IMG/VR virus record: IMGVR_UViG_3300020473_000011
Location: 124,001 to 188,000 of that record
Strand: one strand, 5' to 3'
DNA length: 64,000 nt
A model generated the notes under the pieces. It had not been told where the DNA came from. It did not search any database and saw only the letters and a program-made list of their open reading frames with translations. This document shows, piece by piece, positions 930-59,100 of this stretch. Position 1 is the stretch's first letter. Each line of letters starts with the position of its first letter. The position numbers and the translations under genes are program-made.

Positions 930-2249
930 CTACTTAGGTTCGAACTGTTTGTGACAGGTGATGATATGGTCGGCCAAGACAGGGTCTAGTTTGTGCTCTT
1001 TGGCCAAGTCGCCGAATTTAGCGACTGCATTACGTACCTCGTCGATGATGGTCTCGGCGCGGCGCTTAGGCACATTACAGTACTGGGCAAACGCGTGTAT
1101 ATCATCCAGCGTATGACCAGCACTCTTACCATTCAGCGTCAGCTGGTGGCTCTTCGTCCAGCGCCCGCTAGGGTCGTATGAGAATGTCATATCGTAAGCA
1201 GGTGATAAAGACCACTGGCCACGTTTGTTCATCAAAAAGCCGAAGTTCTTAGAGTGGTCGTCAAAGTTAACTGCAAAGTGATTGAACACCGTGCGTCGAA
1301 ACTGTTGCTCAATATCAACTTGCGGTAGTCTTAATTCTCGCATCGACATAATCAATTGTTCGTAGCTATACGCGGCGACATCATCACGGTCGATATGCGC
1401 CAGCCCGCACCAGCTAACGAAATGTACCTTATTGCCACGCTCATCACGGTCGAAGCGCTCGGTAACAAAGTGGCGGGCGCTGCCATCATCCAGTAGCTCA
1501 CAATGCGCCATGTTGATCCCCGCCTCTGCGCACAGTAGCGAATAGATGTATTCAACCACCGTCATATCATTCGGGTCGACGCCGTCTCGGTCTTTATTAT
1601 TAGATATTCCATCGAACTTAATAAGATAGTAGCCAAAACCCTCGGGTGCTTTTACTTGGCCTGAGCGAACTTCGTTACGCTCTTTGTGCCATGCAATCAA
1701 TGCCTTTGCTCGTGCGCCACCAGCCCCTGACGTACCAACACGAATAGCATCACTTAGGTTATCATGCTGATCTGCGGCCAGTGTTGTCTGGAACGCTTCA
1801 CGCTCATTAACGATGTCATTCGCGAACTGGGCAAGGTCGGCCACGTCGAACGCTTCACTTGTTTCCAGTGCACGTGATGACGGGTCGAACTCAAGTGCAC
1901 CCATACCACGCTGACCGATGTAGCATAGTTTCTCTACAGGGTTCAACGAGTCGGGCTTGCGACCGTTCTTGGCCAACCACTGGTTAATGATTTTGTTACC
2001 GTAGGTATCAGGAAGGCTGTCTATGACCATTCCGTTAAGCCCACTGAACGTACGCTTTGAAATGTTATCGAAGACGTAGGGTTCATCCCTTAGTGGCATA
2101 ATAAGCGGTGCTACCTGTATACCACTTTTTTGAAAGCGTGGGTCGTATCGAAATACGGCCACGTCGTTGCGCTCATCCCATGCCAGTGCGCCTATGCGTG
2201 TGCCCCATAAGCGAACCGTTGCACTGTGAACAATTTTATTGCTCGACAT
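930..2249 (-). CDS. hipA: HipA-family Ser/Thr kinase toxin
   Basis: N-terminal coupled domain (LWGTRIGALAWDE...FRYDP), Gly-rich loop SGAGGARAK, YLIKFD, catalytic DDHSKNF, LSPAYD. Confidence 0.95.
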   Translation of the reverse strand: MSSNKIVHSATVRLWGTRIGALAWDERNDVAVFRYDPRFQKSGIQVAPLIMPLRDEPYVFDNISKRTFSGLNGMVIDSLPDTYGNKIINQWLAKNGRKPDSLNPVEKLCYIGQRGMGALEFDPSSRALETSEAFDVADLAQFANDIVNEREAFQTTLAADQHDNLSDAIRVGTSGAGGARAKALIAWHKERNEVRSGQVKAPEGFGYYLIKFDGISNNKDRDGVDPNDMTVVEYIYSLLCAEAGINMAHCELLDDGSARHFVTERFDRDERGNKVHFVSWCGLAHIDRDDVAAYSYEQLIMSMRELRLPQVDIEQQFRRTVFNHFAVNFDDHSKNFGFLMNKRGQWSLSPAYDMTFSYDPSGRWTKSHQLTLNGKSAGHTLDDIHAFAQYCNVPKRRAETIIDEVRNAVAKFGDLAKEHKLDPVLADHIITCHKQFEPK

Positions 2250-2524: not shown

Positions 2525-2890
2525 ATGAACCTGACTCTTTTAACGAACAAACAAATCATTGCAGATCTCGCCGAGCGGGTTGATACACTACGTGTCCAAA
2601 ACGACATACAGGTGCGTGACCTTGTTGCGGCAGGTGTCAGTAGCAGTACCTATGCCCGTTTCTTGAAAGGCAATACAATCGGCTTGGATAAACTGATCAT
2701 CATTCTTCGTGAGATCGGCTGCTTAGAAGATCTGAACAAGCTGTGCAACGTCGTGACGATTGACCCGATTGCAGTAGTCGAGCAGCAAACGACGCGTAAG
2801 AAGCGTGTTGCTACGAAGTCTGACGCGATGGCCACCAGCGACGGTGACGACGATGAGGTGTTTGTGTGGGGTGAAGACGCCGACGATTAA
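2525..2890 (+). CDS. HipB-like XRE HTH antitoxin/regulator
   Basis: LAERVDTLR...AGVSSSTYARFLKGNTIGLDKLIIILREIG HTH, P..V...RKKRV motif and a C-terminal Trp tail (FVWGED); adjacent to hipA. Confidence 0.75.
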   Translation: MNLTLLTNKQIIADLAERVDTLRVQNDIQVRDLVAAGVSSSTYARFLKGNTIGLDKLIIILREIGCLEDLNKLCNVVTIDPIAVVEQQTTRKKRVATKSDAMATSDGDDDEVFVWGEDADD

Positions 2891-3824: not shown

Positions 3825-4235
3825 TTAATTGTATATCGGTGACAGGTACTCGCGTATGTGACGTATACAGTCGGCGCGTAGTTCCCGCTGCTTACCCTCA
3901 TACAAGCCCTCCCCCGTTGATGGGACAGGATTTAGAAAACTACCACTGTAATGCTGCCATGTTGCAAAGATATGGCGTCTGTGTGCCTTATGCACGGTAC
4001 TGATGAAACCTGTCTCACCGCAAATGTTACGTACGTCTGACATGTCACCTGTACCCTCGGCGCGGTTAAGTAACACTTGTAGATTTAGGTCAAGCTTGCG
4101 TAACTTCTTGTGACATGACCTGTGGGTGCAGTTTGGTTCAAAGCATACAAAGCAAAGTGGGTCTTTCGTCAACGCGAGGATTTGGTCATCAGTCATGGTG
4201 GCCATGTTATCAGTGTCTCTTTTACTACTATTCAA
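3825..4235 (-). CDS. Hypothetical Cys/His-containing protein
   Basis: CFVC...C.H..C motif; likely start at MATMTD. Confidence 0.6.
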   Translation of the reverse strand: MNSSKRDTDNMATMTDDQILALTKDPLCFVCFEPNCTHRSCHKKLRKLDLNLQVLLNRAEGTGDMSDVRNICGETGFISTVHKAHRRHIFATWQHYSGSFLNPVPSTGEGLYEGKQRELRADCIRHIREYLSPIYN

Positions 4236-4275
4236 TAAAAATCATTGTACAATGATTTGGTTATAGTGTCTACAG

Positions 4276-4904
4276 AAAACGACTGCACCCGAGTGGTTTA
4301 CAGCTAGATCTAGTTTAGACGCGCATGACCCTGATCAACCCCGTACTGCCCTGCCAACGTCGCTGGTAAAAGAGAAAGAAAAGGAAGATAAGGAAAAGGC
4401 GCAGGGGTGTCCTCAAAAAGACGACTGCATAAAAGACGACTGCACGGGTGAGGCTCCGCGAACTGTGTTCCTTTAGTGGGTCGAGTGTTGTACAATGCAA
4501 TCTGACTTTTGTTATGAGACCTAGAGAGAGCAAGACTATGAGTACATTAAGCGCACATCAACTTTTAGAAGACCACGGCCTTACGGCTGAGCAGTTACTA
4601 GAAACAGGTAGCAGCCAGCAAAAGTTGATTGACCACTATACGAAGAACCTTGAAAAGGTGCTAAAGAGTCACGGTGCCACTAGCGATTACTTCACTAACG
4701 CCTTCTTTATGCTACAGGGTGTGAACATGGGCTTGAGTGTAGGCGAAGCTGCACGTTGGACAACCGATGAACTTGAGCGTCTTCACGACATCAAAATCGA
4801 CAACGCGTAATACCACCCTTCCCTAAAGATAGACCTTATCTAAAGGCAGTGCACTACTGGGCTGCCTTCTTTCCAAAAGACGACTGCATAAATGACGACT
4901 GCAC
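4276..4904 (+). repeat. Iteron-like GACGACTGCA direct repeats flanking a small gene
   Basis: AAAAGACGACTGCATAAA(A/T)GACGACTGCAC at 4416-4445 and 4875-4904; partial copy at 4276-4288; inverted partial copy at 5832-5843. Confidence 0.8.
4538..4810 (+). CDS. Hypothetical protein
   Basis: MSTLSAHQLLEDHG... with a GAGAG RBS; part of track ORF 4448..4810. Confidence 0.65.
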   Translation: MSTLSAHQLLEDHGLTAEQLLETGSSQQKLIDHYTKNLEKVLKSHGATSDYFTNAFFMLQGVNMGLSVGEAARWTTDELERLHDIKIDNA

Positions 4905-4935
4905 TGCGTGGTCACACACCATTGGTGTTGATGTG

Positions 4936-5088
4936 TCAGTCAACCTTCATTAGGACATAGACACCTGCCAGTACGCCGAAGAGGGCAAAGAGAAAGCTCG
5001 TGATTGATTCGTTGTACATGGCCATAATAAGGCCGATGCTGCCTACGATTAGACTAAAAAGTCCAAGCGCCGATACTAGAAAGCTCAT
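4936..5088 (-). CDS. Small two-TM membrane protein
   Basis: MSFLVSALGLFSLIVGSIGLIMAM...FLFALFGVLAGVYVLM. Confidence 0.55.
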   Translation of the reverse strand: MSFLVSALGLFSLIVGSIGLIMAMYNESITSFLFALFGVLAGVYVLMKVD

Positions 5089-5161
5089 AAGGATTACCTG
5101 TCTCGTGTAGTTCTCCCAGTCTAGCACCGTTTGGACATGCCTGCACCATTGGCTCTGTGAA

Positions 5162-5680
5162 CTAGCGTGCCAGTCCGTATACAAAAGCTGACCACCACAG
5201 GGCTGAGGCTAGTACAACGATTAGGTGTGGCTTAGCGGTGACCGCAGGCGTGTGCTGGGTGACCTTGGGGTCAGGCTCTTTTCCCATGTACTGGTCAAGC
5301 GCGCATGTACAACGCTTATACCATGTGCAGGTTTTGTTATGATGTACGTACATCAGTTTCTCAGGGCTGTTCCGCGTCAGCTCGTCCAGAATGACCTTAC
5401 CGAAGATAGACATTACCTGTCCCCTTGTTATTTGGCGGTTAATTGCGTCGGATGTCTTGCTATTAATTGTACAACGTAATTGGAGTAAATACACATTTAC
5501 TTCATTCACTGCGCCCGTATTTAAAGGGCTGTAGCGGTTCCTACTTTTTGTAAATGAAGCGAACACTTCCATACCACAGTCATAGGTAAGAGTCTCCCAC
5601 CAGCGAGCGCCTAAACCACTGCGGTGCAGGTGCTTTGCATAATTATTCATGCCGTATTCACCCCTAAAATAGCCCTGCAT
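5162..5680 (-). CDS. Hypothetical protein
   Basis: 172-aa ORF with a hydrophobic C-terminus. Confidence 0.55.
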   Translation of the reverse strand: MQGYFRGEYGMNNYAKHLHRSGLGARWWETLTYDCGMEVFASFTKSRNRYSPLNTGAVNEVNVYLLQLRCTINSKTSDAINRQITRGQVMSIFGKVILDELTRNSPEKLMYVHHNKTCTWYKRCTCALDQYMGKEPDPKVTQHTPAVTAKPHLIVVLASALWWSAFVYGLAR

Positions 5681-5910
5681 ATTTATTCAAATCGTTGTAC
5701 AAGACTTAGTGAATAGCTATTCACCTGTGGATAACTGGGGCGCAGCGCTTTTTGCTGTCGACAATACTGACCCACCTCCACATCAATCATTGTACAACAC
5801 TTCAATGGTGCAGACTTCTGTCCCCAGCCTATTTATGCAGTCGAGTGAATAGGACTTATCCACAGAAATCCGAGTGAATAACACCGATAAATAAGAGTGA
5901 ATAAAACGCC
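5681..5910. other. Candidate plasmid-type replication origin
   Basis: Perfect DnaA boxes TGTGGATAA 5726-5734 and TTATCCACA 5856-5864; (G)AGTGAATA repeats at 5708, 5843, 5872, 5895; lies where gene orientation diverges. Confidence 0.55.
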
Positions 5911-6061
5911 TCAATCCGTTGCTAATGACCTGCGTCTCACTGGTTCACACAATATAGCTTGAGTTATCACTAGTACAGGTGATACCCTTCGCACCCTGAA
6001 ACAGGGGGCTGGTCTTTTAAAAAGATGTGAGGCCGCCCGATGAACTTAAATTAACGTATAA

Positions 6062-7342
6062 ATGAGACGCAAGATGACTTGTAGAAATCACTGTAGTTAT
6101 CATGATGGTACCGACCCTACTTCAAATAAGGGTAATGGTAGGTATGTATGTGACCTTTGTGATAGTGAAACCCAGCTAAGCTGGTGGCCTTCGGTAGATG
6201 AGTTTTTCTATAGACCAAAAAGGCTTTCTCGTGGGCGTAAGGAATTTAAGGAAGCCGAGCACATCAAAGTGGGCTTTGACCCTGCGCGCAAGAGTGAACG
6301 CTACACAGGTCTTTACTACATACTGTGTGAGAACTCACAGCCTCTTACGTATGATGATGTACTCTGGGTGCAGCAACACACGACACCGCTTGAGCTGTTC
6401 GGCCACTACATCAGCCCTGACGAGTTCGACACCCATGATGAGGATGACGTTGCCTTGTGGCATAACCTTTGTGAAATCTACAGTGACTGGCCGACTGACC
6501 CCGAAAGCGAGGAAGGTGCTGCTAAGCGAGAGTGGTACTATGAAATCAGAGAGGGTACCAGCCCTTTCTTGTACGAGGCAGATTCTGTTCTTAGTGTGTA
6601 CAGCCTCGACGGGCATGGGCGTTATCCTGTGCCGAGTAACAAAGGGCAGCTCAGAGGTCTTGCCCTCGATATTGCCTACGACGAGCTAAACTTGATTGAG
6701 CATACTGATGCACAGGGCAACAACACCGACTACGGACTCGTTACCGAGTACGACACGACTAATTGCACATGCGAAGTAGATCGCGTCGAGTTGTCATTTG
6801 ACCCTCTGCAATGCGACGCAGCCTACAATGACAATATGACCGCAGGTGTGAGTGCTATCGCGTATGCACAAGAACCTACACGTAGCCAGAAGCACCCTTG
6901 TGGTACAGTCATTACGCATAAGCGTGTAAAGCCTGACACTGATACCTATCTTAGGGAGCTGTCGTCTATCGTAGAAGAACATCAATCCACCGTGGTTAGC
7001 GCTCTTGAACGCCTGAGTAAGCGTCTATCTGTCAATGAGGGCAAGCGTAGCCTTGTCGTCGTCGAGAACGTGTACCCTACTGCTGTTGCTGCCACAGATA
7101 CCGCCGAAATGGAGAAGCGTCGCGACGAAACCATAAAGCTTATGGCGCTCAGACAGGGTGTCCCCCTTGACCAAGTGGAATACACCCACACGGCACTGGA
7201 AATGGAATCAGCCCCCGTAGGTCAATGGGAGTTGTACACTGTGATAAAGGATAGAAGCTACCTGATAGTCACGGCACCCTATGCTACTAAGATAATACTG
7301 AGTGACAAGGGCTATAAGCCAAAGGCTGGTGGTCGTCTCTGA
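6062..7342 (+). CDS. Hypothetical acidic protein with N-terminal Cys/His motif
   Basis: 426-aa ORF, CRNHC...CDLC; no family recognised. Confidence 0.75.
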   Translation: MRRKMTCRNHCSYHDGTDPTSNKGNGRYVCDLCDSETQLSWWPSVDEFFYRPKRLSRGRKEFKEAEHIKVGFDPARKSERYTGLYYILCENSQPLTYDDVLWVQQHTTPLELFGHYISPDEFDTHDEDDVALWHNLCEIYSDWPTDPESEEGAAKREWYYEIREGTSPFLYEADSVLSVYSLDGHGRYPVPSNKGQLRGLALDIAYDELNLIEHTDAQGNNTDYGLVTEYDTTNCTCEVDRVELSFDPLQCDAAYNDNMTAGVSAIAYAQEPTRSQKHPCGTVITHKRVKPDTDTYLRELSSIVEEHQSTVVSALERLSKRLSVNEGKRSLVVVENVYPTAVAATDTAEMEKRRDETIKLMALRQGVPLDQVEYTHTALEMESAPVGQWELYTVIKDRSYLIVTAPYATKIILSDKGYKPKAGGRL

Positions 7343-7445
7343 GACGGCCTTATCTTACGCGAATAATTGAAACAGGTGGCCATTTTACAGCGATAAGCAC
7401 ACGGGTAATGGCGCACTGAGAACTAACCGAAAGGACATTGTCATC

Positions 7446-8246
7446 ATGACACAGAAGACCGACACTATACGCATGGTAAAGGTAAACCACCCTGCGAAGA
7501 ACCGAACGTATTACTTGACCGAAGGTAACTACCACTATCTCTTTGCGAGCCGTGGACACCTACCCCAGTCAGACCCTGCTGCGCATGAAAAGACACTGGA
7601 TGCGCAGTCCTCTGTTATCCTTGAAGACGGTGCGCTGTGGCTTAACCGTCTTTGGCCAGCGGCTACCGTCAATGAACTGATGGCGTTGATTGGCGAGCCT
7701 GCCCTGCCAAACGACCAGTCGCTGCCCTATAAGAGCGCCACGTATCAGGGTACCACGTACTTTATCACTGACGCTGTCTGGGATGAGCAAATAGCACCGA
7801 CCTTCGCGCGCCTTGGAAGCTTCCCTGTGGAACGCGCAGCGCTTTATTGTGACTATGCCTACAAAGCAGGGAGCACTGTGAAGTGTACGTATTCATGTGT
7901 CGTCGGGAGCTACCACCAAATCTTGCTACAGCTCAAAGCACTGGCCGAGGTCGTTGACCTTAACGAAGAGCCTGAGCTGGTACACATCGAGCCGTACAAG
8001 GAAACCTATACACTTGATGAGGTGAAGCAGCTACTGGACGAGAACACCGCACTTAAAAAAGATGTTGAGCGCTTAGAGACAAATCAGGTCTGGTACGTCA
8101 ATGCACTAGAAGCACTCTCACCGTTCCGCTATGCAGCCCACCAGCTGCTCACTGAGCCTGAGCGTTTGTCACACCGTGAAGCCCTTCAAAAGGTTCTCGA
8201 TATGGCCGAAGCTTATTTTGCGAAGAAGGATAGCCAGTCTAGCTAA
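7446..8246 (+). CDS. Hypothetical protein
   Basis: 266-aa ORF, AAGGA RBS, C-terminal coiled coil. Confidence 0.75.
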   Translation: MTQKTDTIRMVKVNHPAKNRTYYLTEGNYHYLFASRGHLPQSDPAAHEKTLDAQSSVILEDGALWLNRLWPAATVNELMALIGEPALPNDQSLPYKSATYQGTTYFITDAVWDEQIAPTFARLGSFPVERAALYCDYAYKAGSTVKCTYSCVVGSYHQILLQLKALAEVVDLNEEPELVHIEPYKETYTLDEVKQLLDENTALKKDVERLETNQVWYVNALEALSPFRYAAHQLLTEPERLSHREALQKVLDMAEAYFAKKDSQSS

Positions 8247-15200: not shown

Positions 15201-15446
15201 TTGAGACGGGAAAGAGACATGACAAACAAGAGTAAAATAGCCCTAGGCATCCTATGCGTTGTCCTAGTTATCGGTGGTGTGAGCGCAGCAAGCCGTTATA
15301 TGTCGCGCTGGACATCAACGTTTAGTATTCAGCACAAGATTATTCAACCCAAGGCAGGCAAAGAGTGTGTTGTTGTCTCAACCACCAGCGCTGTTGCGAC
15401 AGACTGCTGGGATGTACCTGCGGCTAAGGTAGGAGGTCGTCACTGA
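15201..15446 (+). CDS. Small membrane-anchored protein
   Basis: N-terminal TM segment; C-x-VV...DCW. Confidence 0.6.
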   Translation: MRRERDMTNKSKIALGILCVVLVIGGVSAASRYMSRWTSTFSIQHKIIQPKAGKECVVVSTTSAVATDCWDVPAAKVGGRH

Positions 15447-16321
15447 TGGACACGAATGAGTTAGCAACCCGAATGAAGATGTACGAGCTGTCTACGCCTC
15501 ATCGGATCCCGAGCCTGATGCCGATTGTCGTCCGTTTGGATGGGCGTAGCTTTTCGACGTTTACGAAAGACATGAACCGTCCCTTTGATACACAGTTCCA
15601 TGAGGCGATGTGTGCTCTCACAGCCTTCTTAGTGGAGCGGACTAACGCAACCATTGGCTACACCCAGTCTGACGAAATCAGCCTTGTCTTTTTGAACACG
15701 AACTATAAGTCAGATCACCTCTTCGGTGGGCGTAAGCAGAAGATTGAGTCATTACTCGCTGGTATGGCCTCAGCCTTCTTCATGACACAAGTTCAGCAAT
15801 ACTGGCCAGATAAGCTGGTGGACTTCCCCCACTTTGATGCGCGTGCGGTTGCCTTCCCCAATGAAGTAGAAGCCTATAACTGTATTGTATGGCGCGAACA
15901 GGATGCAACTAAGAACAGCGTTCAGTTACTGGGTCAGTCCTACTATAAGCACAGCCGCTTGGTGTTGCTGTCTAACAAAGCGATTCAACACGCGCTCTTT
16001 ACTGAGCACAACGTTAATTGGAACGACCTAGAACCATGGCAAAAGCGCGGTACCTACTTTCAGCAACGTAAGGTAGACGGCGTTCGCTGTGCTGTGGCTC
16101 TCGATATGCCACCCATCACGCGTTGCAGTAATGCCATGGGTGTCTTGCTCCGAGGTGAGCAGCCTGCTGAGTTATTCATGAGCTGGCCAAAACCCCTTGA
16201 TACGAATGAGGCTCGTATGGAAGACGGTACGTTAGCTAGTCTTGAGAAGAGAAAGCAGCAAGTTCTTGCGTCTATGGGCGTGCCATCAGACATTATCGGT
16301 GCGAACGGAGGGTATAAGTAA
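15446..16321 (+). CDS. tRNA(His) guanylyltransferase Thg1-like protein
   Basis: VRLDGRSFSTFT, PFD, YTQSDEISL, FGGRKQK, FDAR, WREQDATKNS, KRG motifs. Confidence 0.95.
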   Translation: MDTNELATRMKMYELSTPHRIPSLMPIVVRLDGRSFSTFTKDMNRPFDTQFHEAMCALTAFLVERTNATIGYTQSDEISLVFLNTNYKSDHLFGGRKQKIESLLAGMASAFFMTQVQQYWPDKLVDFPHFDARAVAFPNEVEAYNCIVWREQDATKNSVQLLGQSYYKHSRLVLLSNKAIQHALFTEHNVNWNDLEPWQKRGTYFQQRKVDGVRCAVALDMPPITRCSNAMGVLLRGEQPAELFMSWPKPLDTNEARMEDGTLASLEKRKQQVLASMGVPSDIIGANGGYK

Positions 16322-17681: not shown

Positions 17682-17726
17682 AGACACTGAGACACTGAGA
17701 CACTGAGACACTGAGACACTGAGACA
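17682..17726 (+). repeat. Tandem repeat (AGACACTG)x5.6 abutting a start codon
   Basis: Read directly from the sequence; the ATG follows at 17727. Confidence 0.95.
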
Positions 17727-18494
17727 ATGACCGATAAAACTGAGACACCGAAAACTGACCATGAACACGTGCTGACGCTTGTACAGAGCCTCTATAACCG
17801 TGCCTACGCTGACAAGCCTGATGCAGTACCTTTTGAGCCGAGTGATACACTAGCGGGTCTCATTGACCAGTTAGACAATATGCTGGTGGGTGTATTGGAT
17901 GAGCGTGAGGAACTTACCAAGGAGAACAAGCAGCTTCGTAAGAACCAGCTAGACCTCTTTGATTCACTCGATACGTCAAGCCATGAGCTAGCTTCATTAA
18001 TAGAGCACGTCAATAACGAACTAAGTAACAATATCAGTAGTGCCGATACAGAACCGCCTGAGTACCTAGATGCTGAAACCCCGTATAAAGCCTACCACTT
18101 GTTAATGGATATTCTGCCGTTTATCTCTACACATGGCGAAGATACGAACCATCTTGTGGAGCGTATGTATACGCGCCGTACAGCTTCTCACGCTAAACTG
18201 CCAACGCCACTACCAATCCATGACCCTGAAATGTATAAGCGCTGCGCAGAGAAGACGAAGCACGCTATCGACGAGTGGAGGCTACGCATTCATGCACATG
18301 ATCAAACTTACCTAGAAACAACATTGAAGTTCCGTGCGCTGGCCAGTACGCAGCTTCACCTGCTGTACCAACAAATGGCCTGCCCACATAACGACACCCG
18401 TGTGACAGAGTACCCTGACGTGCCCGATAAAACGTTCACGTGCGTTAAGTGTCATGCAAGCTACACCGACAGTGGAGCCACTAGCCATGAGTAA
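17727..18494 (+). CDS. Hypothetical protein (coiled coil, C-terminal Zn-ribbon-like)
   Basis: CPH...CVKC near the C-terminus. Confidence 0.7.
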   Translation: MTDKTETPKTDHEHVLTLVQSLYNRAYADKPDAVPFEPSDTLAGLIDQLDNMLVGVLDEREELTKENKQLRKNQLDLFDSLDTSSHELASLIEHVNNELSNNISSADTEPPEYLDAETPYKAYHLLMDILPFISTHGEDTNHLVERMYTRRTASHAKLPTPLPIHDPEMYKRCAEKTKHAIDEWRLRIHAHDQTYLETTLKFRALASTQLHLLYQQMACPHNDTRVTEYPDVPDKTFTCVKCHASYTDSGATSHE

Positions 18495-24659: not shown

Positions 24660-26772
24660 GCGTCACGCCTACTTACTAAACCAAACTTGATACCTCTTAG
24701 ATTTACCTGCGTAGCACAGACGTGCTCGCGCGTGTGTCACGTAATCACGCCCACTACAAAGCAAACCCGATCACACTCGCCTCAATAAAGCTAACTATAC
24801 CCGCATGACCTCGGGTCAGAGTGCTAAGCGAACCGCAATTCGTTGTACAACACTTTCGTTTTTATAGTGGTATATACCCTGCCCTGTCCTCGGGTCAGAG
24901 TATAGAGAAGCTTTCGGGTGCCCTTTACGAACTTCCTACTGCCCCACCGATATTAGATAAACGCCTGTTTAAAGGTCACTATAGTGGTTCTTTGGCTTTC
25001 CGTAAGTGACCCGAGGTCACTTAGCTGTGGTAGTGGACTCGTATAAGCAGGTCTTAGTGAACACTGTACAACGTTTTATCTGTCGGATCGTAAGGCTAGC
25101 ACTCGGCTAGCTGCGCCTTCTCGACACTGCGGTTAACTAAGGGGTGCTTGTAATACATGGGGATGTGACCCAAGGTCAGGCTCAAAGGTCGAGGTGAGGG
25201 TCAACAGTCTCACCCAACTGGCAGCGTTGTACAAGCATTGCCTAAACCCCTGCGCCGCAGTGGGCTAATTTTTCGTACCGACGATGTGAGGGTTGAGGCG
25301 ACCGTACGCCAGAAAAACCTTTAATTTCATACAAACTCTATATGTATACGCCTAGACACACTGCAAAAGTAGGCGTCATGGTGTCGGCTGAACGGTTTAT
25401 TTTGGGTTACACACTGCGGCACAGGGGATTTCGTTGAATCAGAGTGTTAGGCAAAGTGAGCTAATACCTTATGTAGCAGGGGTATAGAGTGGAACCATAA
25501 TGACAACCCCTCGCTTCGCTCGGTTTAATCACGGCTTAGTCGCAGCTTTAATTACTAGTTTCCGTCGGTTCAGTAACGTTTTTGATGGCGGTTAGGGTTG
25601 TGCTGTTACTGATATTAGATGTGCATTGGTGCGTAGTCTGCTACTCATTAGTGGTTCTGCTTGTCGATTAGTGAGTAGAGTGTTACTCATAGTGAGAAGC
25701 TATTTGTGCCTATCTATTTACATTAATGGTTCTAGTATTGCTCTCTTGCTGTCTAGTTGTGGTCTTATAGTTGCGTCAGTTAATGGTGCTGGTTTGCATT
25801 CTCTGGTTTTACTTGGCGTTACTGAGTGTCTACTTTGGTTGCAAATATGATGCACGGTTATCGCATTGCTTGTATTGCTTGAGTGTATGTAGTTATGTAT
25901 AGGGGAAATGCAAACAGGGTTTTACTAACTTTCTAGTGTTGCAGTGATATTCCGCAACTGGGTAGTTGAACCTCAGTATAGGAAAAAGTGCGTGTGACCT
26001 CGGGTCATATTGGGGTGTTTTGTGTCTACTTTTGCGATTCTAGACACTGATTTCGGTCTGACCTCGGGTCATGGGTCACTATTTAGCGGTGTATTGTACA
26101 ATGCTTTGGGGTTGTGCCCTCGGGTCAGATAACCTTTAACTATATAGGTTTCTTGCCGAATCTCGGTATAACCGCACTGGCGGCGGCAGGTTAATAACAG
26201 TAGCGATGCCGCTTGTTAGTTCATAGTGTGACGTGGAATGTTTATAGTGAGCTTTATATGTGGTCGTACATTAATAGTAACGTGTATGTATACGTATATA
26301 GAATGAATAGTAGAATGTCTGGAATAGCTTATAGTAATAGGCTTGTATGTATCTATAGAATGTAATGTATATGTGCATACTAATATTATGTATGTGTACA
26401 TGTGTAATATAGTAGATGTAGTTATAGTGTCTATAGTGAGCATAGTGTTGTTCATAGTATTTATGTTCTTACTGAGGCAATGAGTTATCGACTATCCTGT
26501 GCGGGCGCGCAAGTGTTCTTTCTTTTTAGTGGAAGGTGGCTGCTTTCTTGTGTTGGCCTGCCCTCGGGTCAGGGTGCTTGTGGGTGTTCTTTTCGTTGTA
26601 CAATGGATTTTGACTGTCCTGTGCGGGGCGCTGCGGGCTTTTCTCGTATGAAGATGAGTGCTTGTGTGGGTTTTACTTTTTAGATGGCTTGTGGGGCGTC
26701 TGAGGGCGTTTTTACGTTTTTGAGGGGGTGTGGCGACTATCCTGTGCGGCCGCCAAGCGGAAGTAGAGGCGC

Positions 26773-34415: not shown

Positions 34416-35501
34416 CTAGGGGGCGAGAACTATAGCAAGGTTCTTCATCAATTTCCAGCTGATTAACGACGGAATCCCGCTGCAACGCTCGTATTGTGAC
34501 TTGATTGGCGTCTCATTATCAAAGCCCCATGTATCGGGTACCGTTTGCAGGCGCAGACTCTCGCGAACAGTGAAGCGACGGCTTGACCCATCAGACATAC
34601 GCATGATCTGTGCAGCGTTCTTACCCATCGGACTCGACATAATGGTGCGTGATGGACGGTCTTTGCTGATCACAGACAGGAACGTCGTGCGGCCACCCGA
34701 TGAATAGTAGGCTCCAAGCATGAAGTCTTTTTGGTCTTGTTCAGGTAGATTACGCCAGTTACCACCTTCGGGAACCTTATGTACAAACGGTTTCTCATCG
34801 TTACGCAGTGTCCATTTCTCGTGGTACTCATGGTTATTGTGACCGTCGGGCGTCTCAGGTAAACCTTTTAGTGCATCGGCCAGCGTGAATTGCACAGGGC
34901 TTTTCTCTGGGAACTGGAACTCACCCTCAAGGTCTTTACGTACCCCAACGATAAAGACGCGCTCTCGGCGCTGGGGCACACCATACTCGGAGCAATCAAT
35001 AACTTGCCACTTAACTTTGAACTCGGTAGACAGGCGCTCAATCATTTCCTCAAAGAAAGGCATATTCTTGCGGTCAACGAGACCACGCACGTTTTCTATT
35101 AGGAACCCTTTAGGCTTCTTGTATAGGTAGCAATCAACGAGTAGTTCAGCAAGGTTACCATTCTTTTCGCAAGCAGCGCCGTTACCCTCTCCTGATCGTG
35201 ACCATGGTTTACAGGGGAATCCGCCTGTGTAGACGTCAGCATCAGGGATGTCGTCAAAGTTAAGTGTCTTTGCATTGAGTACAACGGCAACGTTGGCAAT
35301 GTTCTTGTTAAAGTTACGTACGGCGTGTTTGTTATTATCAAAGGCGAAGATTGTTTCAAAGCCTGCGTACTCTGTCCCAATTGCCCCCACACCTGCACCG
35401 CAGTAGAAGTCCACAACTGTTAACCCGTTCTTTGGTAACTGGGTCATTTGCTCACCATTAGGGCAGCCGTGCAGCTGCGCCTCGTGCACATAATTGTTCA
35501 T
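34416..35501 (-). CDS. C5-cytosine DNA methyltransferase (orphan)
   Basis: Motif I DFYCGAG, IV GGFPC, VI ENV, VIII PQRRERVF, IX RRFTVRE..RLQ. Confidence 0.95.
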   Translation of the reverse strand: MNNYVHEAQLHGCPNGEQMTQLPKNGLTVVDFYCGAGVGAIGTEYAGFETIFAFDNNKHAVRNFNKNIANVAVVLNAKTLNFDDIPDADVYTGGFPCKPWSRSGEGNGAACEKNGNLAELLVDCYLYKKPKGFLIENVRGLVDRKNMPFFEEMIERLSTEFKVKWQVIDCSEYGVPQRRERVFIVGVRKDLEGEFQFPEKSPVQFTLADALKGLPETPDGHNNHEYHEKWTLRNDEKPFVHKVPEGGNWRNLPEQDQKDFMLGAYYSSGGRTTFLSVISKDRPSRTIMSSPMGKNAAQIMRMSDGSSRRFTVRESLRLQTVPDTWGFDNETPIKSQYERCSGIPSLISWKLMKNLAIVLAP

Positions 35502-35834: not shown

Positions 35835-36713
35835 ATGACACACGCAATGAACCCCGAAAATTTGGGGTTGTTAAAGAAGACCCTCGATTCGCTGCCCGAT
35901 GGCGTGCTGGTCGTTTCTCCTGACCGAAAAATTGTTTATGCGAATGACCGATTTATCGCTATGTGGGGGATCCCAAGCACCGTCATGGGGACTCATGACG
36001 ACAGCAAGATACTTGATTATGTTGAGGCGCAGGTCACTGACCTTGAGACTTTCCGAAAGCAGGTAGAGGATTTATACGAGACACGCCGCGAAACAGAAGA
36101 TGAGATCCATCTTACTGATGGCCGTGTTTTTCTCCGCCGAGGGACGTACCACGTTAATGCTGAGGGTGAGACCGCCCACATTTGGGTGTTCTCCGATATA
36201 ACCAGCCTAAAAGCATTTGAGCGCTGTTCGCTTACTGGCGTATTTAACCGCCGTAAGTTCGATGAAGAGTTCGGCTTGCGCCTGCTTGGCATGACAGACA
36301 AGGATATTATTGGCGTAGCGCTACTAGACCTTGATAACTTCAAGCAGTACAACGACAGCTATGGCCACCAGCAAGGCGACCGCTTACTTTCAGAGGTTGG
36401 ACGCTTGTTCCTTGGACGCCTACGTCGTAGAGGCGACACAGCTTATCGTATTGGGGGAGAAGAGTTCCTACTAGTCTGTAAGTGCCGCACTGAGCAACAC
36501 CTGTTTGATTTCATTGATTCAATACGCGCTGATGTTCAGCGCCTTGGCCGTGAGCATGAGAAGAACGCACCTTATAATGTCGTGACCTTTTCGGCAGGCG
36601 TTGGTTTCATACAGGGCAGCGCGAAGGCTGACTACGTGTTTGCCCAAGTAGATAAGGCGCTCTACGCGGCAAAAGAAAAAGGCCGCAACCAACTCGTAAG
36701 GGCTAAGATTTAG
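35835..36713 (+). CDS. PAS-GGDEF diguanylate cyclase
   Basis: PAS domain (LDSLPDGVLVV...YANDRF..MWG), LTGVFNRR, DLDNFKQYNDSYGHQQGD, RxxD I-site (RRGD) and GGEEF active site. Confidence 0.95.
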   Translation: MTHAMNPENLGLLKKTLDSLPDGVLVVSPDRKIVYANDRFIAMWGIPSTVMGTHDDSKILDYVEAQVTDLETFRKQVEDLYETRRETEDEIHLTDGRVFLRRGTYHVNAEGETAHIWVFSDITSLKAFERCSLTGVFNRRKFDEEFGLRLLGMTDKDIIGVALLDLDNFKQYNDSYGHQQGDRLLSEVGRLFLGRLRRRGDTAYRIGGEEFLLVCKCRTEQHLFDFIDSIRADVQRLGREHEKNAPYNVVTFSAGVGFIQGSAKADYVFAQVDKALYAAKEKGRNQLVRAKI

Positions 36714-56112: not shown

Positions 56113-59100
56113 TTAGTACGCCATCGCTCTTAGGTTAGCTACGACTGGACGGTGAAGCGCCGAGCCTGACAGTACAAGCATGATTCGAGTCTTGTCGTCA
56201 TTAAAGTCTGACGCTTTGTACTCGTACTCGTATAAGTCAGTGTCTAGCTGTGACTTCTCAGGGTTAATCATTTCAACCCATTGAGAACTACCGCTTGACT
56301 CGTCTTGGTAGTAAACCGAGACGGCTGCTTCGCCTTTCAGTTCTGCTTCAAACTTAACTGAAAGCGTACTTGGGTCGTCGCCTGCGCGGAAACTACGCGT
56401 ACAGTACACGGCTTTCCCTGCTTGCGATCCCAGCATCATTAGAAGCTCTGGCCACATCAGCGGCGTTAGATGCTTCGTACCTGTCAGCTTGGCTTTAACC
56501 GCGATAGAACCTGACACCTCTTCGTTAAGACGTAGTGGGGTGTTTTCGTTCATATCATAGTTACGACCATCCTCATCGGTGAACGTAATTGTGATGTTGC
56601 TGTCCTGTGACGGACGCATCGTACCACCTACTACCATGGCATCTGATAGCTTGTTCACGTTGAAGCTGCCTAGCGGGATCTCACGCTCAGTGTTCACGAA
56701 CTCAGCACGTAGTAAGCGGAACGTTAAGTCTGCTGACTGGTGCGGTGTCCACGTTGTCGCATTCGAAGACGAAAGCATTACACCGATTTGGTAAGCCTGC
56801 GCACTGATCACCTGACCGTCTTCTGATACACCACCTAGTTCAGCGATGGCCATTTCGTGGTCTGGGTCATCTGTAAGTACTACGAACGCATACTCAGTAC
56901 CTGCTTCAATGAATGTTGGGTCAAACGTAATACGCGTCCAACCGTGCTTAGCAGGGTTTGCGTATGACTCTGGCTTACCATCAATCACAGGGTCTTGAAT
57001 GTGGTGCGTATTCGTATCATAAAGCAGTAGGTCTTGCGGGTTAACGCGTACTTCTGCAATCGTCTTATCAGGAATACCTACTGATGTCGTACGTAATTGA
57101 ACAACGATTTGGTCGCTACCAATTGTCGTCATCTTAATGTCTACGCCTGACATGTAGTGGTCTTCTTTCAGCGTGAATGTCTGTGCTAGTGGATCCCAGC
57201 GCTGGAAGCCACCTGAGAACTTAGTTTGCCATTCTTCTGTCGTAACCGTACCTTTGCCTGTGAAGCTTGCTTGAGCCTCTGTGCCAAGCGTACCTTTCAC
57301 ATCAACTAGCTTACGGCCAGCTGTGAACGTGTTACCTTCAATTGAAATCTTACCTTTGATTACACCGTTGTTGTCAGCAACAACTGGGTTACCATCAACT
57401 TCAAGTACAGGCATTGTAACTTCGTCAAACGTTAAGCTTTGGATTTGCTCAGTCGGGCGGAAGCCTTCAATTGTGAACTCGATGTCCAGTGCACGAAGGA
57501 ACTCTAGTGCGCGCGTTGTCTCACCCACTTTAGCCGAACTTACGTTACCTTGGAATTTAAAGCCGTATACGCCGTGGTTCACAACTGTTGAGTTGATTGA
57601 GCCACCTGACTTCAAGTTCATCTTAGTTTCTGTCCAAACGTCAACCGCTGGCACCAGTGTCATTTTAGCTGGGATTGGCTTAAATGCCGCATAAGGGTTC
57701 ACCTTCATTGAGCCTGTCATTTCTGTTTGCTCAACTGGGTTACCAGCATCAATTAGTACCGTGTGCTCATATTCAAGCGTCCAAGGTTTTGTTTCCTTGG
57801 TTGGGTTCAAGCCGTTCGGGTTCATGTCGATAGGCAAGATAAGCTCTTCACGGGCAGGGTTGATTGTTGCACGAGCATCAATGTCACCATCTTGGCCAAT
57901 GATTAAGTTTTCCATACCTAAGTCACGCATGTCGTCGTCAAGCATTGGGTCTACGAATAAGCCATGCGTAGCACTTGGTGCATTACGAGAGGTGTCACTC
58001 TTTAAGCGCTCTAATGCGACTAAGTCATACAAGTCTGAGATACTGCGCTGCATCTTGTTCAGGTCTTGCATCTTAACAACTTTTACGCCGTCAAGTTTAA
58101 GCTCTGGGTCTTCCCACCACGTATGATAGATTTCAGCCAGTGATAATGCTTTGTTTGGTAGTGTTGGCGCTCTAGGTGGCGCAAAAGCACTCGCCATACC
58201 ACGCGCAAGCGTAAGCTGACCTTCTGGGTTTAAGTACAGACGGTCAATACGCGGCATACGCCAGCGGTAGTCAACAGAGATATATAGTTGGTCACCTGCA
58301 ATCTCGTCTACTTCTGCAAGCTCAACAGGTTGGCCATTCGGGCTATCAACAGGCACGATGTTAGCTGGAATGTCGAAACCTTTACGGTCACCCGTCGCTG
58401 TCACAAATGAGGTAATGTCCGTGTAGTAGATAAACTCCACGAAGAACGTACCACCCTTGCCAGGTCCCTCACTAAGCCAGTAAATAACAGACTCATTGGT
58501 GCCGCCGTTACCGTATTCCCAGTCAATACCTTTCTGGTATTCAGTGCCTGCGCCATTATGAACACGCGTGATAGCTTGAACCGACGTAACACCTACAGGG
58601 TTCTCATTGATGTCACCTAAGTCACCCACGTTACGACGTGATAGCTGGTGATTTGTCACCTTCGCAGGTGCAATAACTTCAATGATTTCCTCAACAGGTC
58701 CAAAATCAAGTGCCACCGTCATCGTGCTGTCAGCACGCGGTACAAAGCCCACAGGCTCAGCATTTGTCTGGTATGTTGTAGCTGCATTCATGTACTCACG
58801 ACGTAAGTCGTGCAGTAGGTCAATCTCACGGCCACCAACGTGTGCACGGCCTGATGAAATCGAGTAAGTCGTCGTGTCTTTGGTATCGTCCCACGTGAAG
58901 TTATCAAGACGTACATCTAAGCCGTTTACAGCATAGTTACCGTGTGCGTCTACATCATAGCGAACGATTGTACCGATAAGCTCTTGGGCTTCGTCAGACA
59001 GTAGTGCTTCTTCTTCAAGTACAGCACCTTCTGAGATCTTATACACCTCATAGAAAGTACCTTTCGCGTCAGGGTCATACGACGTGCCCCACTTAGCGAC

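What the first reader, a model, noticed from the sequence alone, without database searches (positions are those of the whole stretch)
5681..5910. DnaA-box/iteron origin in a phage: phage-plasmid lifestyle
Seen: two perfect, oppositely oriented DnaA boxes, four (G)AGTGAATA repeats (one within the palindrome GTGAATAGCTATTCAC), two TTGTACAA boxes and divergent flanking genes. Known: DnaA boxes plus iterons typify theta plasmid origins such as P1 oriR. Inference: together with several TA loci and a virion module, the element replicates as a plasmid prophage. Neither flanking ORF (5162..5680, 6062..7342) resembles a Rep I recognise, so one may be a new initiator.
Basis: partly seen in the sequence, partly recalled or inferred. 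Interest (0 to 1): 0.65.

Follow-up and report, generated by a model that had tools for sequence, protein, structure and literature searches.

The report
Conserved DnaA-box origin-like element, huge phage
A ~450-bp non-coding stretch holding the only two perfect DnaA boxes of a ~420-kb circular marine phage-like replicon is conserved motif by motif in diverged relatives while the genes beside it come and go, so it is most likely a replication origin fired by the host initiator DnaA, but neither neighbouring ORF is its initiator.

Summary
The two TTATCCACA boxes are the only perfect ones in the 281.5-kb record and in about 50 kb more of the replicon. The real unit is larger, window 5462-5905. 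It is conserved in blocks across four variants, while the spacers and the 150 bp downstream are scrambled.

Three parts of the interpretation fail.
- TTGTACAA is a genome-wide promoter or operator palindrome (149 copies), not an origin motif.
- The left ORF (5162-5680) is probably not a gene.
- The 426-aa right ORF is missing in two variants that keep the element, so it is an expressed accessory gene, not the cognate Rep.

The invariant core of the "iterons", GTGAATA, is the reverse complement of positions 2-8 of the DnaA consensus. They are more likely weak DnaA boxes than Rep iterons.

A plasmid-like lifestyle gains support. The genome is a circular or permuted 419.6-kb molecule. It has a ParA ATPase next to a 15-bp tandem array, T4-type tail genes, and a syntenic relative that is a plasmid in a cultured Pseudoalteromonas.

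The best reading is a host-DnaA-dependent origin. Origin function overall is about 0.7; this Rep-less version is about 0.5. Nothing has been tested experimentally.

The parts
5462..5510 (.). Block 1, an invariant AT-rich 49-mer. It holds TTGTACAA-1 (5467-5474), the inverted repeat GTAAAT-acac-ATTTAC (5485-5500), and an R5M-like box TCATTCACT (5502-5510). It contains the least stable duplex of the region.
   Evidence: 45 of 49 columns are invariant in four variants. The 40-mer at 5460 has dG -43.7, beyond the genome's 99th percentile of -45.7. In variant C a 578-bp insertion separates it from the rest.
5636..5689 (+). Two direct 14-bp AT-rich repeats, TGCATAATTATTCA (5636-5649) and TGCATATTTATTCA (5676-5689). 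They are candidate unwinding-element repeats beside the left DnaA box.
   Evidence: Repeat family D5. They are 13/14 to 14/14 invariant in four variants, while the spacer between them varies in length. The second least stable 40-mer starts at 5680.
5695..5702 (.). TTGTACAA-2, a copy of the genome-wide palindrome aATCGTTGTACAAyGATt.
   Evidence: Invariant in four variants. The motif has 149 copies in the genome.
5708..5725 (.). Palindrome AGTGAATAG/CTATTCACC, two inverted copies of the repeat.
   Evidence: (I21). It is perfect in A and B, has 1 mismatch in C, and has decayed in D.
5726..5734 (-). Left consensus DnaA box (TTATCCACA on the minus strand).
   Evidence: It is perfect in A, B and C, and has one mismatch (TGTTGATAA) in D.
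5756..5765 (.). Invariant TGTCGACAAT block with no known binding protein.
   Evidence: 10 of 10 columns are invariant in four variants, with variable flanks.
5790..5811 (.). TTGTACAA-3 (5790-5797) plus the invariant CAATGGTGC (5803-5811).
   Evidence: An AATGGTGCAG motif also lies beside TTGTACAA elsewhere in the genome.
5832..5904 (.). Right cluster. It runs TTTATGCAG, repeat 1 AGTGAATAG (5844-5852, box-like on minus), the consensus DnaA box TTATCCACA (5856-5864, plus) followed by GAAATC, repeat 2 AGTGAATAA (5873-5881), a degenerate copy GAT(A/G)AATAA (5886-5894), and repeat 3 AGTGAATAA (5896-5904).
   Evidence: The right box, GAAATC and the GTGAATA cores are invariant in all four variants and in fragments L004 and L005. 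Start-to-start spacings are 29 and 23 bp. There are no substitutions here in the run variants.
5905..6061 (+). Variable spacer and leader of the rightward transcript. The RNA contig starts at about 5996.
   Evidence: Only 7% of columns are invariant. Positions 5943-5982 are hypervariable, and the metatranscriptome contig begins at 5996.
6062..7342 (+). 426-aa orphan ORF with N-terminal Cys pairs. It is an expressed accessory gene, not a conserved partner of the element.
   Evidence: It has only 3 relatives in 5.8e9 and 1.8e9 proteins. RNA contigs cover it. It is absent in variants C and D. It has no Pfam, PHROG, PDB or Atlas match, and AF2 gave pLDDT 39.
7446..8246 (+). 266-aa orphan ORF. It is the only right-hand neighbour kept in all four variants (78%, 46%, 45% identity). 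Its function is unknown.
   Evidence: It has no family, PDB or Atlas match, and AF2 gave pLDDT 46.6.
5162..5680 (-). 172-aa ORF, probably spurious, at least over its N-terminal 72 codons.
   Evidence: It overlaps conserved non-coding blocks. Frame-breaking indels occur in variants B and D, and no ORF is called there. A 578-bp insertion interrupts it in variant C. Its codon score is 0.052, against 0.146 +/- 0.095 for ORFs of this size. No RNA contig covers it. It has no relatives outside near-identical copies.

Best explanation
Window 5462-5905 is a self-contained, non-coding cis-acting module of a roughly 419.6-kb circular phage-like replicon. It most likely works as a replication origin fired by the host initiator DnaA.

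Inferred mechanism:
1. DnaA sits on the two consensus boxes (5726-5734 and 5856-5864).
2. From there it recruits further DnaA to the GTGAATA repeats. These are read here as lower-affinity boxes, because TTATTCAC[T/A] matches 7-8 of 9 positions of TTATNCACA.
3. The complex opens one of the adjacent invariant AT-rich stretches: the 14-mer repeats at 5636-5689, or block 1 at 5462-5510.
4. The host helicase and replisome are then loaded.

The three invariant TTGTACAA palindromes would place the module under the replicon's genome-wide TTGTACAA-binding regulator.

Shown: the motifs, their uniqueness, their block-wise conservation, the independence of the module from its flanking genes, and the lack of RNA contigs over it.

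Inferred: DnaA binding, unwinding, and origin activity.
For: 1. These are the only two perfect DnaA boxes in 281.5 kb plus about 50 kb more, and they lie 139 bp apart.
2. Footprint across four variants (A window, C L015, B L003, D L017). The right box plus GAAATC, the three GTGAATA cores, three TTGTACAA copies, TGTCGACAAT, CAATGGTGC, TTTATGCAG, the 14-mers and block 1 are 89-100% invariant. Spacers are 0-38% invariant, and the next 157 bp are 7%. The adjacent 426-aa and 266-aa proteins are only 42-46% identical between the same variants.
3. The module stays while its flanks change. The left neighbours differ in B and D. A 578-bp insertion sits in C. The 426-aa gene is present in A and B and absent in C and D. 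This fits an autonomous cis site, not a promoter tied to one gene.
4. The invariant repeat core GTGAATA is the reverse complement of positions 2-8 of TTATNCACA (consensus from PMC5716108). The chance of that is about 1.5e-3. The repeat unit is 9 bp with unconserved flanks.
5. The least stable duplex of the neighbourhood lies in invariant AT-rich blocks.
6. Six-frame family searches of the 281.5-kb record found no DnaB, PolA, PolB, PolIII-alpha, Rep3, RPA, phage O or DnaA domain IV. Precomputed Pfam labels of called genes show none of these in about 50 kb more of the replicon. Host-dependent initiation is therefore plausible.
7. Genes locally diverge from this point. The 110-130 kb stretch is on the minus strand, and 130-150 kb on the plus strand.
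8. Metatranscriptome contigs cover 5996-8000 and none cover 4000-5995.
9. A related Pseudoalteromonas plasmid has its own DnaA-box cluster, which includes TTATTCACA.
Against: - There is no functional test.
- The cumulative GC skew of the record has its broad maximum, not a minimum, around this place. Global gene orientation converges on the central third. In this genome the skew follows transcription, so this is weak evidence against.
- The weak boxes mostly point opposite to the strong box beside them. They are not the head-to-tail arrays with 2-bp spacing seen in E. coli oriC.
- The left box and the palindrome have decayed in variant D.
- Block 1 can be moved 580 bp away, as in variant C, so its role as the unwinding element is doubtful.
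- About 90 kb of the replicon (roughly 320-410 kb) was not seen. It may encode a Rep, a replisome or another origin.
- A second candidate cis site, the 15-bp tandem array beside parA, exists.
- Relaxed DnaA-box density alone is not significant.
Confidence: 0.5

Rival explanations
1. This is an iteron-type theta origin as in P1 oriR, F oriS or pSC101. The GTGAATA repeats are bound by a replicon-encoded Rep as monomers on the three direct repeats and as a dimer on the palindrome. DnaA acts as helper. The Rep would not be the 426-aa ORF. It would be the 266-aa neighbour or a gene elsewhere.
For: Three direct repeats lie at 29- and 23-bp spacing, about two helical turns. Two 19-nt units are 84% alike. 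An inverted pair of the same half-site forms a palindrome, as in Rep autoregulatory operators. DnaA boxes flank the repeats and AT-rich blocks are present. These features match the general iteron-origin build reviewed in PMC4980987. The 266-aa orphan is the one neighbour kept in all variants.
Against: Only a 7-9-bp core is conserved between copies and between variants, against 17-22 bp for known iterons. That core equals the DnaA-box core. No Rep3, RPA or phage-O family gene is in the record. The 426-aa gene is dispensable. The 266-aa protein has diverged to 45% identity while the repeats are unchanged, and it has no recognisable DNA-binding fold. The palindrome has decayed in variant D.
Confidence: 0.2
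2. This is a transcription-control region, not an origin. DnaA and the TTGTACAA-binding regulator, plus other factors, set the expression of the rightward operon (426-aa and 266-aa genes onward) or of a switch between life-cycle states.
For: Three copies of the genome-wide promoter or operator palindrome lie in the module and are invariant. The rightward genes are transcribed from about 5996. DnaA is a known transcription factor (general knowledge). The palindrome overlaps a TTGTAC-N17-TATTCA promoter-like arrangement.
Against: None of the three TTGTACAA copies has a TANNNT at 16-18 bp. The 90 bp between the module and the RNA start are hypervariable. The gene downstream differs between variants while the module is unchanged. 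No RNA contig covers the module or the left side.
Confidence: 0.15
3. This is a DnaA-modulating decoy, like DARS or datA. A compact box cluster would titrate host DnaA or change its nucleotide state, to steer host replication for the phage's benefit.
For: In the right cluster a full-consensus box is flanked by weaker boxes in opposite orientation at 3- and 8-bp gaps. This recalls the DARS core, where a consensus box II sits head-to-head with box I at a 5-bp gap (PMC6868365).
Against: The third box is also opposite in orientation, whereas DARS box III is head-to-tail with box II. Most of the conserved module (block 1, the 14-mers, TGTCGACAAT and others) has no counterpart in DARS or datA. No sequence similarity was tested or found.
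Confidence: 0.05
4. This is another kind of cis site: a packaging (pac/cos) site, a recombination site (attP-like), or a partition site whose repeats bind terminase, integrase arm domains or a centromere protein.
For: Repeats together with AT-rich DNA are also typical of such sites. Tyrosine recombinases exist in the genome.
Against: None of these site types needs conserved consensus DnaA boxes. No terminase, integrase or ParB-type gene is adjacent. A better centromere candidate, the 15-bp array next to parA, lies elsewhere. Assemblies show no host junction.
Confidence: 0.04

Closest known systems
P1 plasmid-prophage origin oriR and related iteron origins (F oriS, pSC101, RK2 oriV)
   Same: It has consensus DnaA boxes at both sides, short direct repeats on one helical face, an inverted copy of the repeat, and AT-rich DNA. 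It sits on a replicon that also carries virion genes, ParA and a toxin kinase (HipA).
   Different: There is no adjacent or detectable Rep gene. The repeat core is 7-9 bp rather than 17-22 bp, and it equals the DnaA-box core. There is no GATC at all in 5400-6100, whereas P1 oriR carries Dam sites by general knowledge. There is no second iteron array for copy control.
Bacterial oriC (E. coli type: DUE plus DnaA-oligomerisation region)
   Same: Two full-consensus boxes bracket a region of about 140 bp. There are several 7-8/9 boxes, including an R5M-like TCATTCACT. AT-rich repeats flank one strong box. No plasmid initiator is needed in this reading.
   Different: The weak boxes are mostly antiparallel to the neighbouring strong box and are not spaced by 2 bp. 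There are no GATC sites. Extra invariant blocks of unknown partners are present, and so are three copies of a replicon-specific palindrome. The element lies on a phage-like replicon, not beside dnaA or gidA.
Ori-like gap of Pseudoalteromonas sp. SCSIO 43201 plasmid NZ_CP072685.1 (118.0-119.4 kb)
   Same: It belongs to a relative: a syntenic ParA module with 44% identity and the same dense TTGTACAA motif. It is a long gene-free stretch with a DnaA-box cluster that includes TTATTCACA.
   Different: Its four boxes all point the same way. It has many AAAATCAnnGGT-type iterons and GATC sites. The protein downstream (365 aa) is unrelated to the window's ORFs. There is no sequence similarity to the window module.
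DARS1/DARS2 DnaA-reactivating sequences
   Same: It is a compact cluster in which a consensus box is flanked by weaker, oppositely oriented boxes.
   Different: The orientation pattern of the third box differs, and so do the spacings. The module is far larger and has many other conserved blocks.

Membership tests
Iteron-plasmid theta origin (P1 oriR / F oriS type) | A cognate Rep initiator gene (winged-helix Rep family) next to the iterons | tested here: not met
   The flanking ORFs have no Pfam, PHROG, PDB or Atlas match. Rep3_N, RPA and Phage_rep_O are absent from the 281.5-kb record. The 426-aa ORF is absent in two variants.
Iteron-plasmid theta origin (P1 oriR / F oriS type) | Several direct repeats of 17-22 bp in helical phase | tested here: inconclusive
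   Three direct copies lie at 29- and 23-bp spacing, and two 19-nt units are 84% alike. Only a 7-9-bp core is conserved across copies and variants. Iteron lengths are taken from PMC4980987.
Iteron-plasmid theta origin (P1 oriR / F oriS type) | Host DnaA boxes within the origin | tested here: met
   Two consensus boxes are present. The right one is invariant in all variants.
Iteron-plasmid theta origin (P1 oriR / F oriS type) | Autonomous replication of the isolated fragment | not testable with these tools
   This needs a mini-replicon assay.
oriC-type DnaA-only origin | High-affinity consensus boxes plus arrays of low-affinity boxes able to hold a DnaA oligomer | tested here: inconclusive
   There are two 9/9 boxes and eight 7-8/9 TTATTCAC-type sites. 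Their orientations are mixed and their spacings are unlike E. coli oriC. The relaxed density is not above shuffles.
oriC-type DnaA-only origin | AT-rich unwinding element next to a strong box | tested here: inconclusive
   Invariant AT-rich 14-mer repeats and the second least stable 40-mer lie 25-90 bp left of the left box. The least stable 40-mer lies in block 1, about 215 bp away. Unwinding cannot be tested here.
Phage-plasmid (P1-like lifestyle) | Virion genes on the replicon | tested here: inconclusive
   A T4-type tail sheath, baseplate wedge, gp5-like spike, P2 gpI-like protein and tail fibres were found. Capsid, portal and terminase were not located in the parts scanned.
Phage-plasmid (P1-like lifestyle) | Plasmid maintenance functions (partition, replication) | tested here: inconclusive
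   A 392-aa ParA-type ATPase (AAA_31 7.7e-19, CbiA 5.4e-16) lies 4.2 kb upstream of a 15-bp tandem array. No ParB_N was found in the record. Replication rests on the present unproven origin.
Phage-plasmid (P1-like lifestyle) | Extrachromosomal circular state in the host | tested here: inconclusive
   Three assemblies of 419.5-419.6 kb exist. Two break at the 15-bp array. One is permuted and bridges the array with a scaffold gap. No host flanks were seen. A syntenic relative is a complete circular plasmid of an isolate. Circularly permuted virion DNA would give the same assemblies.

The most novel reading that the evidence does not exclude
This is a roughly 420-kb tailed phage that persists as a ParA-partitioned circular plasmid. 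It replicates from a Rep-less, oriC-like origin driven only by host DnaA, gated by a replicon-wide TTGTACAA regulator. That would make it by far the largest phage-plasmid, and one that has copied the chromosomal rather than the iteron-plasmid initiation logic.
Probability: 0.2. Interest if true: 0.8.

Novelty: new variant of a known kind. Interest (0 to 1): 0.6.

Why it matters
Huge phages are usually thought to bring their own replication machinery. Known phage-plasmids are much smaller and use a Rep with iterons.

This 420-kb marine replicon appears to lack recognisable polymerase, helicase and initiator genes over most of its length. If it initiates at a conserved cluster of host DnaA boxes, it would show two things. 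Host-initiator-dependent, chromosome-style initiation can support a virus-sized megareplicon. And the phage-plasmid lifestyle would extend into the megaphage size range in the ocean.

The module is small (about 450 bp) and sharply delimited by comparative footprinting. The claim can therefore be tested directly with a mini-replicon and DnaA binding assays.

Tried and rejected
- Megablast of 4200-7400 against phages and plasmids gave no match. tblastn of the 426-aa ORF against phages gave none.
- Exact-pattern scans of viral, genome and metagenome contigs found only the same element and one fragment. Related-locus scans with the 426-aa alignment found nothing.
- The exhaustive protein search gave three hits. 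One, P0005, is a repetitive protein matched through its repeats and was rejected.
- AlphaFold models of the 426-aa and 266-aa proteins had pLDDT 39 and 46.6. No fold search was run on them, because low-confidence models give meaningless matches.
- PDB profile searches and Atlas look-ups gave only noise.
- Rfam found nothing in 4800-6300. A small-RNA reading of block 1 plus hairpin was dropped: the hairpin is not conserved in D and no RNA contig covers it.
- A second relaxed DnaA-box cluster, at 232.3 kb of the record, lies inside a 3108-aa ORF and was rejected as chance.
- GC skew gives no origin signal and follows transcription.
- dN/dS for ORF 5162-5680 was impossible, because the two close copies differ at only 2 of 519 sites.
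- A PHROG 'DNA polymerase' hit (record 266,955-268,019) is only a Pol-beta-like nucleotidyltransferase palm.
- I first took the 94-aa gene left of the module in L003 for a HigB toxin. Pfam shows the N4 gp49 / Sf6 gp66 family instead.
- Walking beyond the record reached only about 320 kb, plus the last 9 kb of the 419.6-kb map. About 90 kb remain unseen.

Full report
**Where the window lies.** The window is bases 124,001-188,000 of a 281,557-bp IMG/VR virus record that CheckV rates 67% complete. Three independent assemblies give 419.5-419.6-kb contigs of the same element. Two of them start or end in a 15-bp tandem array (TACTGACCATTGACC, at least 9 copies), which is also the first 137 bp of this record. 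The third, a Tara scaffold of 419,624 bp, is permuted: the record's start lies near its middle, and the array is bridged by a scaffold gap. The replicon is therefore a circular, or circularly permuted, molecule of about 419.6 kb. MAG bins label close copies Aestuariibacter sp.. The stretch was found in 9 studies, including marine and seawater metagenomes.

**The observation.**
- TTATCCACA lies at 5856-5864 and its complement at 5726-5734.
- AGTGAATA starts at 5708, 5844, 5873 and 5896.
- The first of these is half of an 18-bp palindrome.
- TTGTACAA lies at 5695 and 5790.

The two consensus DnaA boxes are the only ones in the whole record, and none occurs in about 50 kb of further sequence from the replicon. 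Two random sites falling within 139 bp of each other in 281 kb has a chance of about 1e-3. A looser count of boxes matching 8 of 9 positions makes this the densest 300-bp window of the genome, but shuffled genomes reach the same density. The looser count is therefore not evidence by itself.

**TTGTACAA is not an origin motif.**
- It occurs 149 times in the record against about 4 expected.
- It is the core of a longer palindrome, aATCGTTGTACAAyGATt.
- 63% of copies lie in the 11.6% of the genome that is non-coding.
- 99 of 149 lie within 150 bp upstream of a gene start.
- Only 27 have a -10-like hexamer at 16-18 bp, against 13.6 expected; the commonest is TATAGT.

It is a replicon-wide promoter or operator element. 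A third copy lies at 5467. None of the three copies here has a -10 at the right spacing.

**Comparative footprint.** Protein look-ups and one DNA-pattern scan recovered four variants of the locus:
- A: the window and L002, 96% identical.
- C: L015/L016, close to A.
- B: L003, L004 and L005.
- D: L017-L019.

The B and D cores are 71-73% identical to A.

It spans window 5462-5905. Scored column by column, these elements are 89-100% invariant:
- the right DnaA box plus the following GAAATC
- the GTGAATA cores of the three direct repeats
- all three TTGTACAA copies
- TGTCGACAAT
- CAATGGTGC
- TTTATGCAG
- the 14-mer TGCATATTTATTCA
- a 49-bp AT-rich block at 5462-5510

Spacers are 0-38% invariant and vary in length. 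The 157 bp between the module and the next gene are 7% invariant. The left DnaA box is perfect in A, B and C and has one mismatch in D, where the palindrome has also decayed. The neighbouring proteins are only 42-46% identical between the same variants. This is purifying selection on individual DNA sites.

**The module is independent of its neighbours.**

*The 426-aa ORF (6062-7342).* It is an orphan with three relatives in the two large protein collections. It is present in A and B. It is absent in C and D, where the module sits about 150 bp upstream of the 266-270-aa gene. A Logan contig from a run labelled as an organism shows the same join directly: 5914 is joined to 7351 with 58 other bases between.

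*The left ORF (5162-5680).* Several observations argue that it is not a gene:
- It overlaps the conserved blocks.
- Its frame is broken by indels in B and D, where no gene is called.
- It is split by a 578-bp insertion in C.
- Its codon score is about one standard deviation below that of ORFs of its size.
- It has no relatives beyond near-identical copies.

*RNA evidence.* In a metatranscriptome, four contigs at 100% identity cover 5996-8000 and none cover 4000-5995. The 426-aa and 266-aa genes are therefore expressed from a start near 5996. The module and the left ORF are not seen as RNA, although contigs show presence better than absence. The 426-aa protein is an expressed accessory gene, not the module's cognate initiator. 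The 266-aa orphan is the only neighbour kept in all variants. Family scans, PDB profile search, Atlas and AlphaFold (pLDDT 46.6) say nothing about its function.

**What the repeats are.** Between copies and between variants, only a 7-bp core with a variable base on each side is conserved. That core, GTGAATA, is the reverse complement of TATTCAC, which is positions 2-8 of the DnaA consensus TTATNCACA (consensus from PMC5716108). A random 7-mer would match that closely about 1.5 times in 1000.
- Read as DnaA boxes, the copies score 7-8 of 9. One copy in variant B reaches CTATTCACA.
- A further invariant site, TCATTCACT (5502-5510), resembles what I recall as the E. coli R5M box; that is memory, not a test.
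- A related Pseudoalteromonas plasmid has a same-orientation box cluster that includes TTATTCACA.

Known iterons are 17-22 bp and co-vary with their Rep (PMC4980987). I therefore favour weak DnaA boxes. The iteron reading keeps real support: the spacings of 29 and 23 bp, two 19-nt units 84% alike, and an inverted pair resembling a Rep operator.

**Origin or something else.**

*For an origin:*
- The boxes are unique and conserved.
- Many conserved sites of different kinds are packed into 450 bp.
- The invariant AT-rich stretches include the least stable duplexes of the neighbourhood. The 40-mer at 5460 is beyond the genome's 99th percentile, and the next is at 5680.
- The module is autonomous from its flanking genes.
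- Gene orientation diverges locally at this point.
- Six-frame family searches of the 281.5-kb record found no DnaB, PolA, PolB, PolIII-alpha, Rep3, RPA, phage O or DnaA domain IV. Precomputed Pfam labels of called genes show none in about 50 kb more.

*Against an origin:*
- Cumulative GC skew shows a maximum, not a minimum, here. In this genome skew follows transcription.
- The weak boxes are mostly antiparallel to the strong ones.
- Block 1 tolerates being moved 580 bp away in variant C.
- About 90 kb of the replicon were not seen.
- Nothing has been tested at the bench.

*The rivals:*
- A pure transcription-control region is less likely. The stretch between the module and the RNA start is hypervariable, and the downstream gene differs between variants.
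- A DARS-like DnaA-modulating element is a low-probability alternative. It is suggested by the weak-strong-weak antiparallel triplet (PMC6868365).
- A packaging, recombination or partition site would not need consensus DnaA boxes.

**Lifestyle.** The tail module is real:
- a T4-type sheath (phrog_23, 3.9e-73; 39% identity to sheaths of large Rhizobium phages annotated as tail sheath)
- five sheath-like paralogues
- a baseplate wedge protein
- a gp5-like spike
- a P2 gpI-like protein
- tail fibres

I did not locate capsid, portal or terminase genes in what I could scan.

Plasmid-type features were found outside the window:
- A 392-aa ParA-type ATPase, followed by a 665-aa orphan, lies 4.2 kb upstream of the 15-bp array. 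The array is a good centromere candidate.
- The only plasmid hit of this ParA is a complete 128-kb circular plasmid of a cultured Pseudoalteromonas. That plasmid is syntenic around parA and equally rich in TTGTACAA.
- HipA, tyrosine recombinases and many cell-type accessory genes are present.

A phage-plasmid is thus a reasonable reading, but it is not shown. Circularly permuted virion DNA would give the same assemblies.

**Verdict.** The element is best described as a conserved, autonomous DnaA-box module, most likely a host-DnaA-dependent origin. Origin function of either kind is about 0.7; the Rep-less version is about 0.5. Neither flanking ORF is its initiator. It is a new variant of a known kind.

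Noticed in passing
whole record; in the window e.g. 4245, 5467, 5695, 5790, 20774, 21804, 22197: The palindrome aATCGTTGTACAAyGATt occurs 149 times in 281.5 kb, against about 4 expected. It is mostly intergenic and upstream of genes, and a subset sits as TTGTAC-N17-TATAGT. It looks like the binding site of a replicon-wide regulator or a special promoter class. The related Pseudoalteromonas plasmid NZ_CP072685.1 is equally rich in it.
   Followed up: partly
record bases 1-137 (outside the window); L023:8810-8889 and L023:3390-6575: A tandem array of the 15-bp unit TACTGACCATTGACC (at least 9 copies) breaks most assemblies. A 392-aa ParA-type ATPase and a 665-aa orphan lie just upstream. Together they look like a candidate partition locus with its centromere. 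The array is also a rival site for an origin.
   Followed up: partly
window 24660-26772: A 2.1-kb ORF-poor stretch lies at the point where gene orientation flips. It carries about 7 copies of the palindromic hairpin motif TGACCTCGGGTCA, several TTGTACAA copies and other repeats. No Rfam family and no tRNA match it.
   Followed up: partly
window 17682-17730: An 8-bp unit, AGACACTG, is repeated 6 times in tandem between two genes.
   Followed up: no
window 4416-4444 and 4875-4903: Two copies of a short 15-bp double repeat (AAAAGACGACTGCAT x2) flank the conserved 90-aa gene at 4538-4810. The same word recurs in another intergenic gap of the record (84.4-84.8 kb).
   Followed up: no
window 930-2249 (-), 2525-2890 (+): A full-length HipA-type kinase toxin (HipA_C 4.9e-48) lies close to small HTH genes. 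It is conserved in variants A and C, about 3.5 kb left of the module.
   Followed up: no
window 15446-16321, 34416-35501, 35835-36713: Cell-type accessory genes are present: a Thg1-like tRNA-His guanylyltransferase, a C-5 cytosine DNA methylase, and a PAS-GGDEF diguanylate cyclase. Beyond the record's end lie NAD-salvage genes, a Dam-type methylase and a PspA cluster.
   Followed up: no
record 240,154-249,007 and 211,543-213,420 (outside the window): Five paralogous sheath-like proteins (phrog_12249) occur in addition to one T4-type tail sheath. A 3108-aa ORF lies at 230,609-239,935.
   Followed up: no
window 56113-59871 (-), 61206-63860 (-): There is a VrlC-like 1252-aa protein, about 30% identical to proteins of Acidithiobacillus, Wolbachia WO and Aeromonas phages. 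There is also a DUF4815 protein with a tail-fibre-like C-terminus.
   Followed up: no
L015:5012-5542 (variant C): A 578-bp insertion carrying a 176-aa orphan ORF and two more TTGTACAA copies sits inside the module, between block 1 with its hairpin and the rest. The two halves of the module can therefore be separated.
   Followed up: partly
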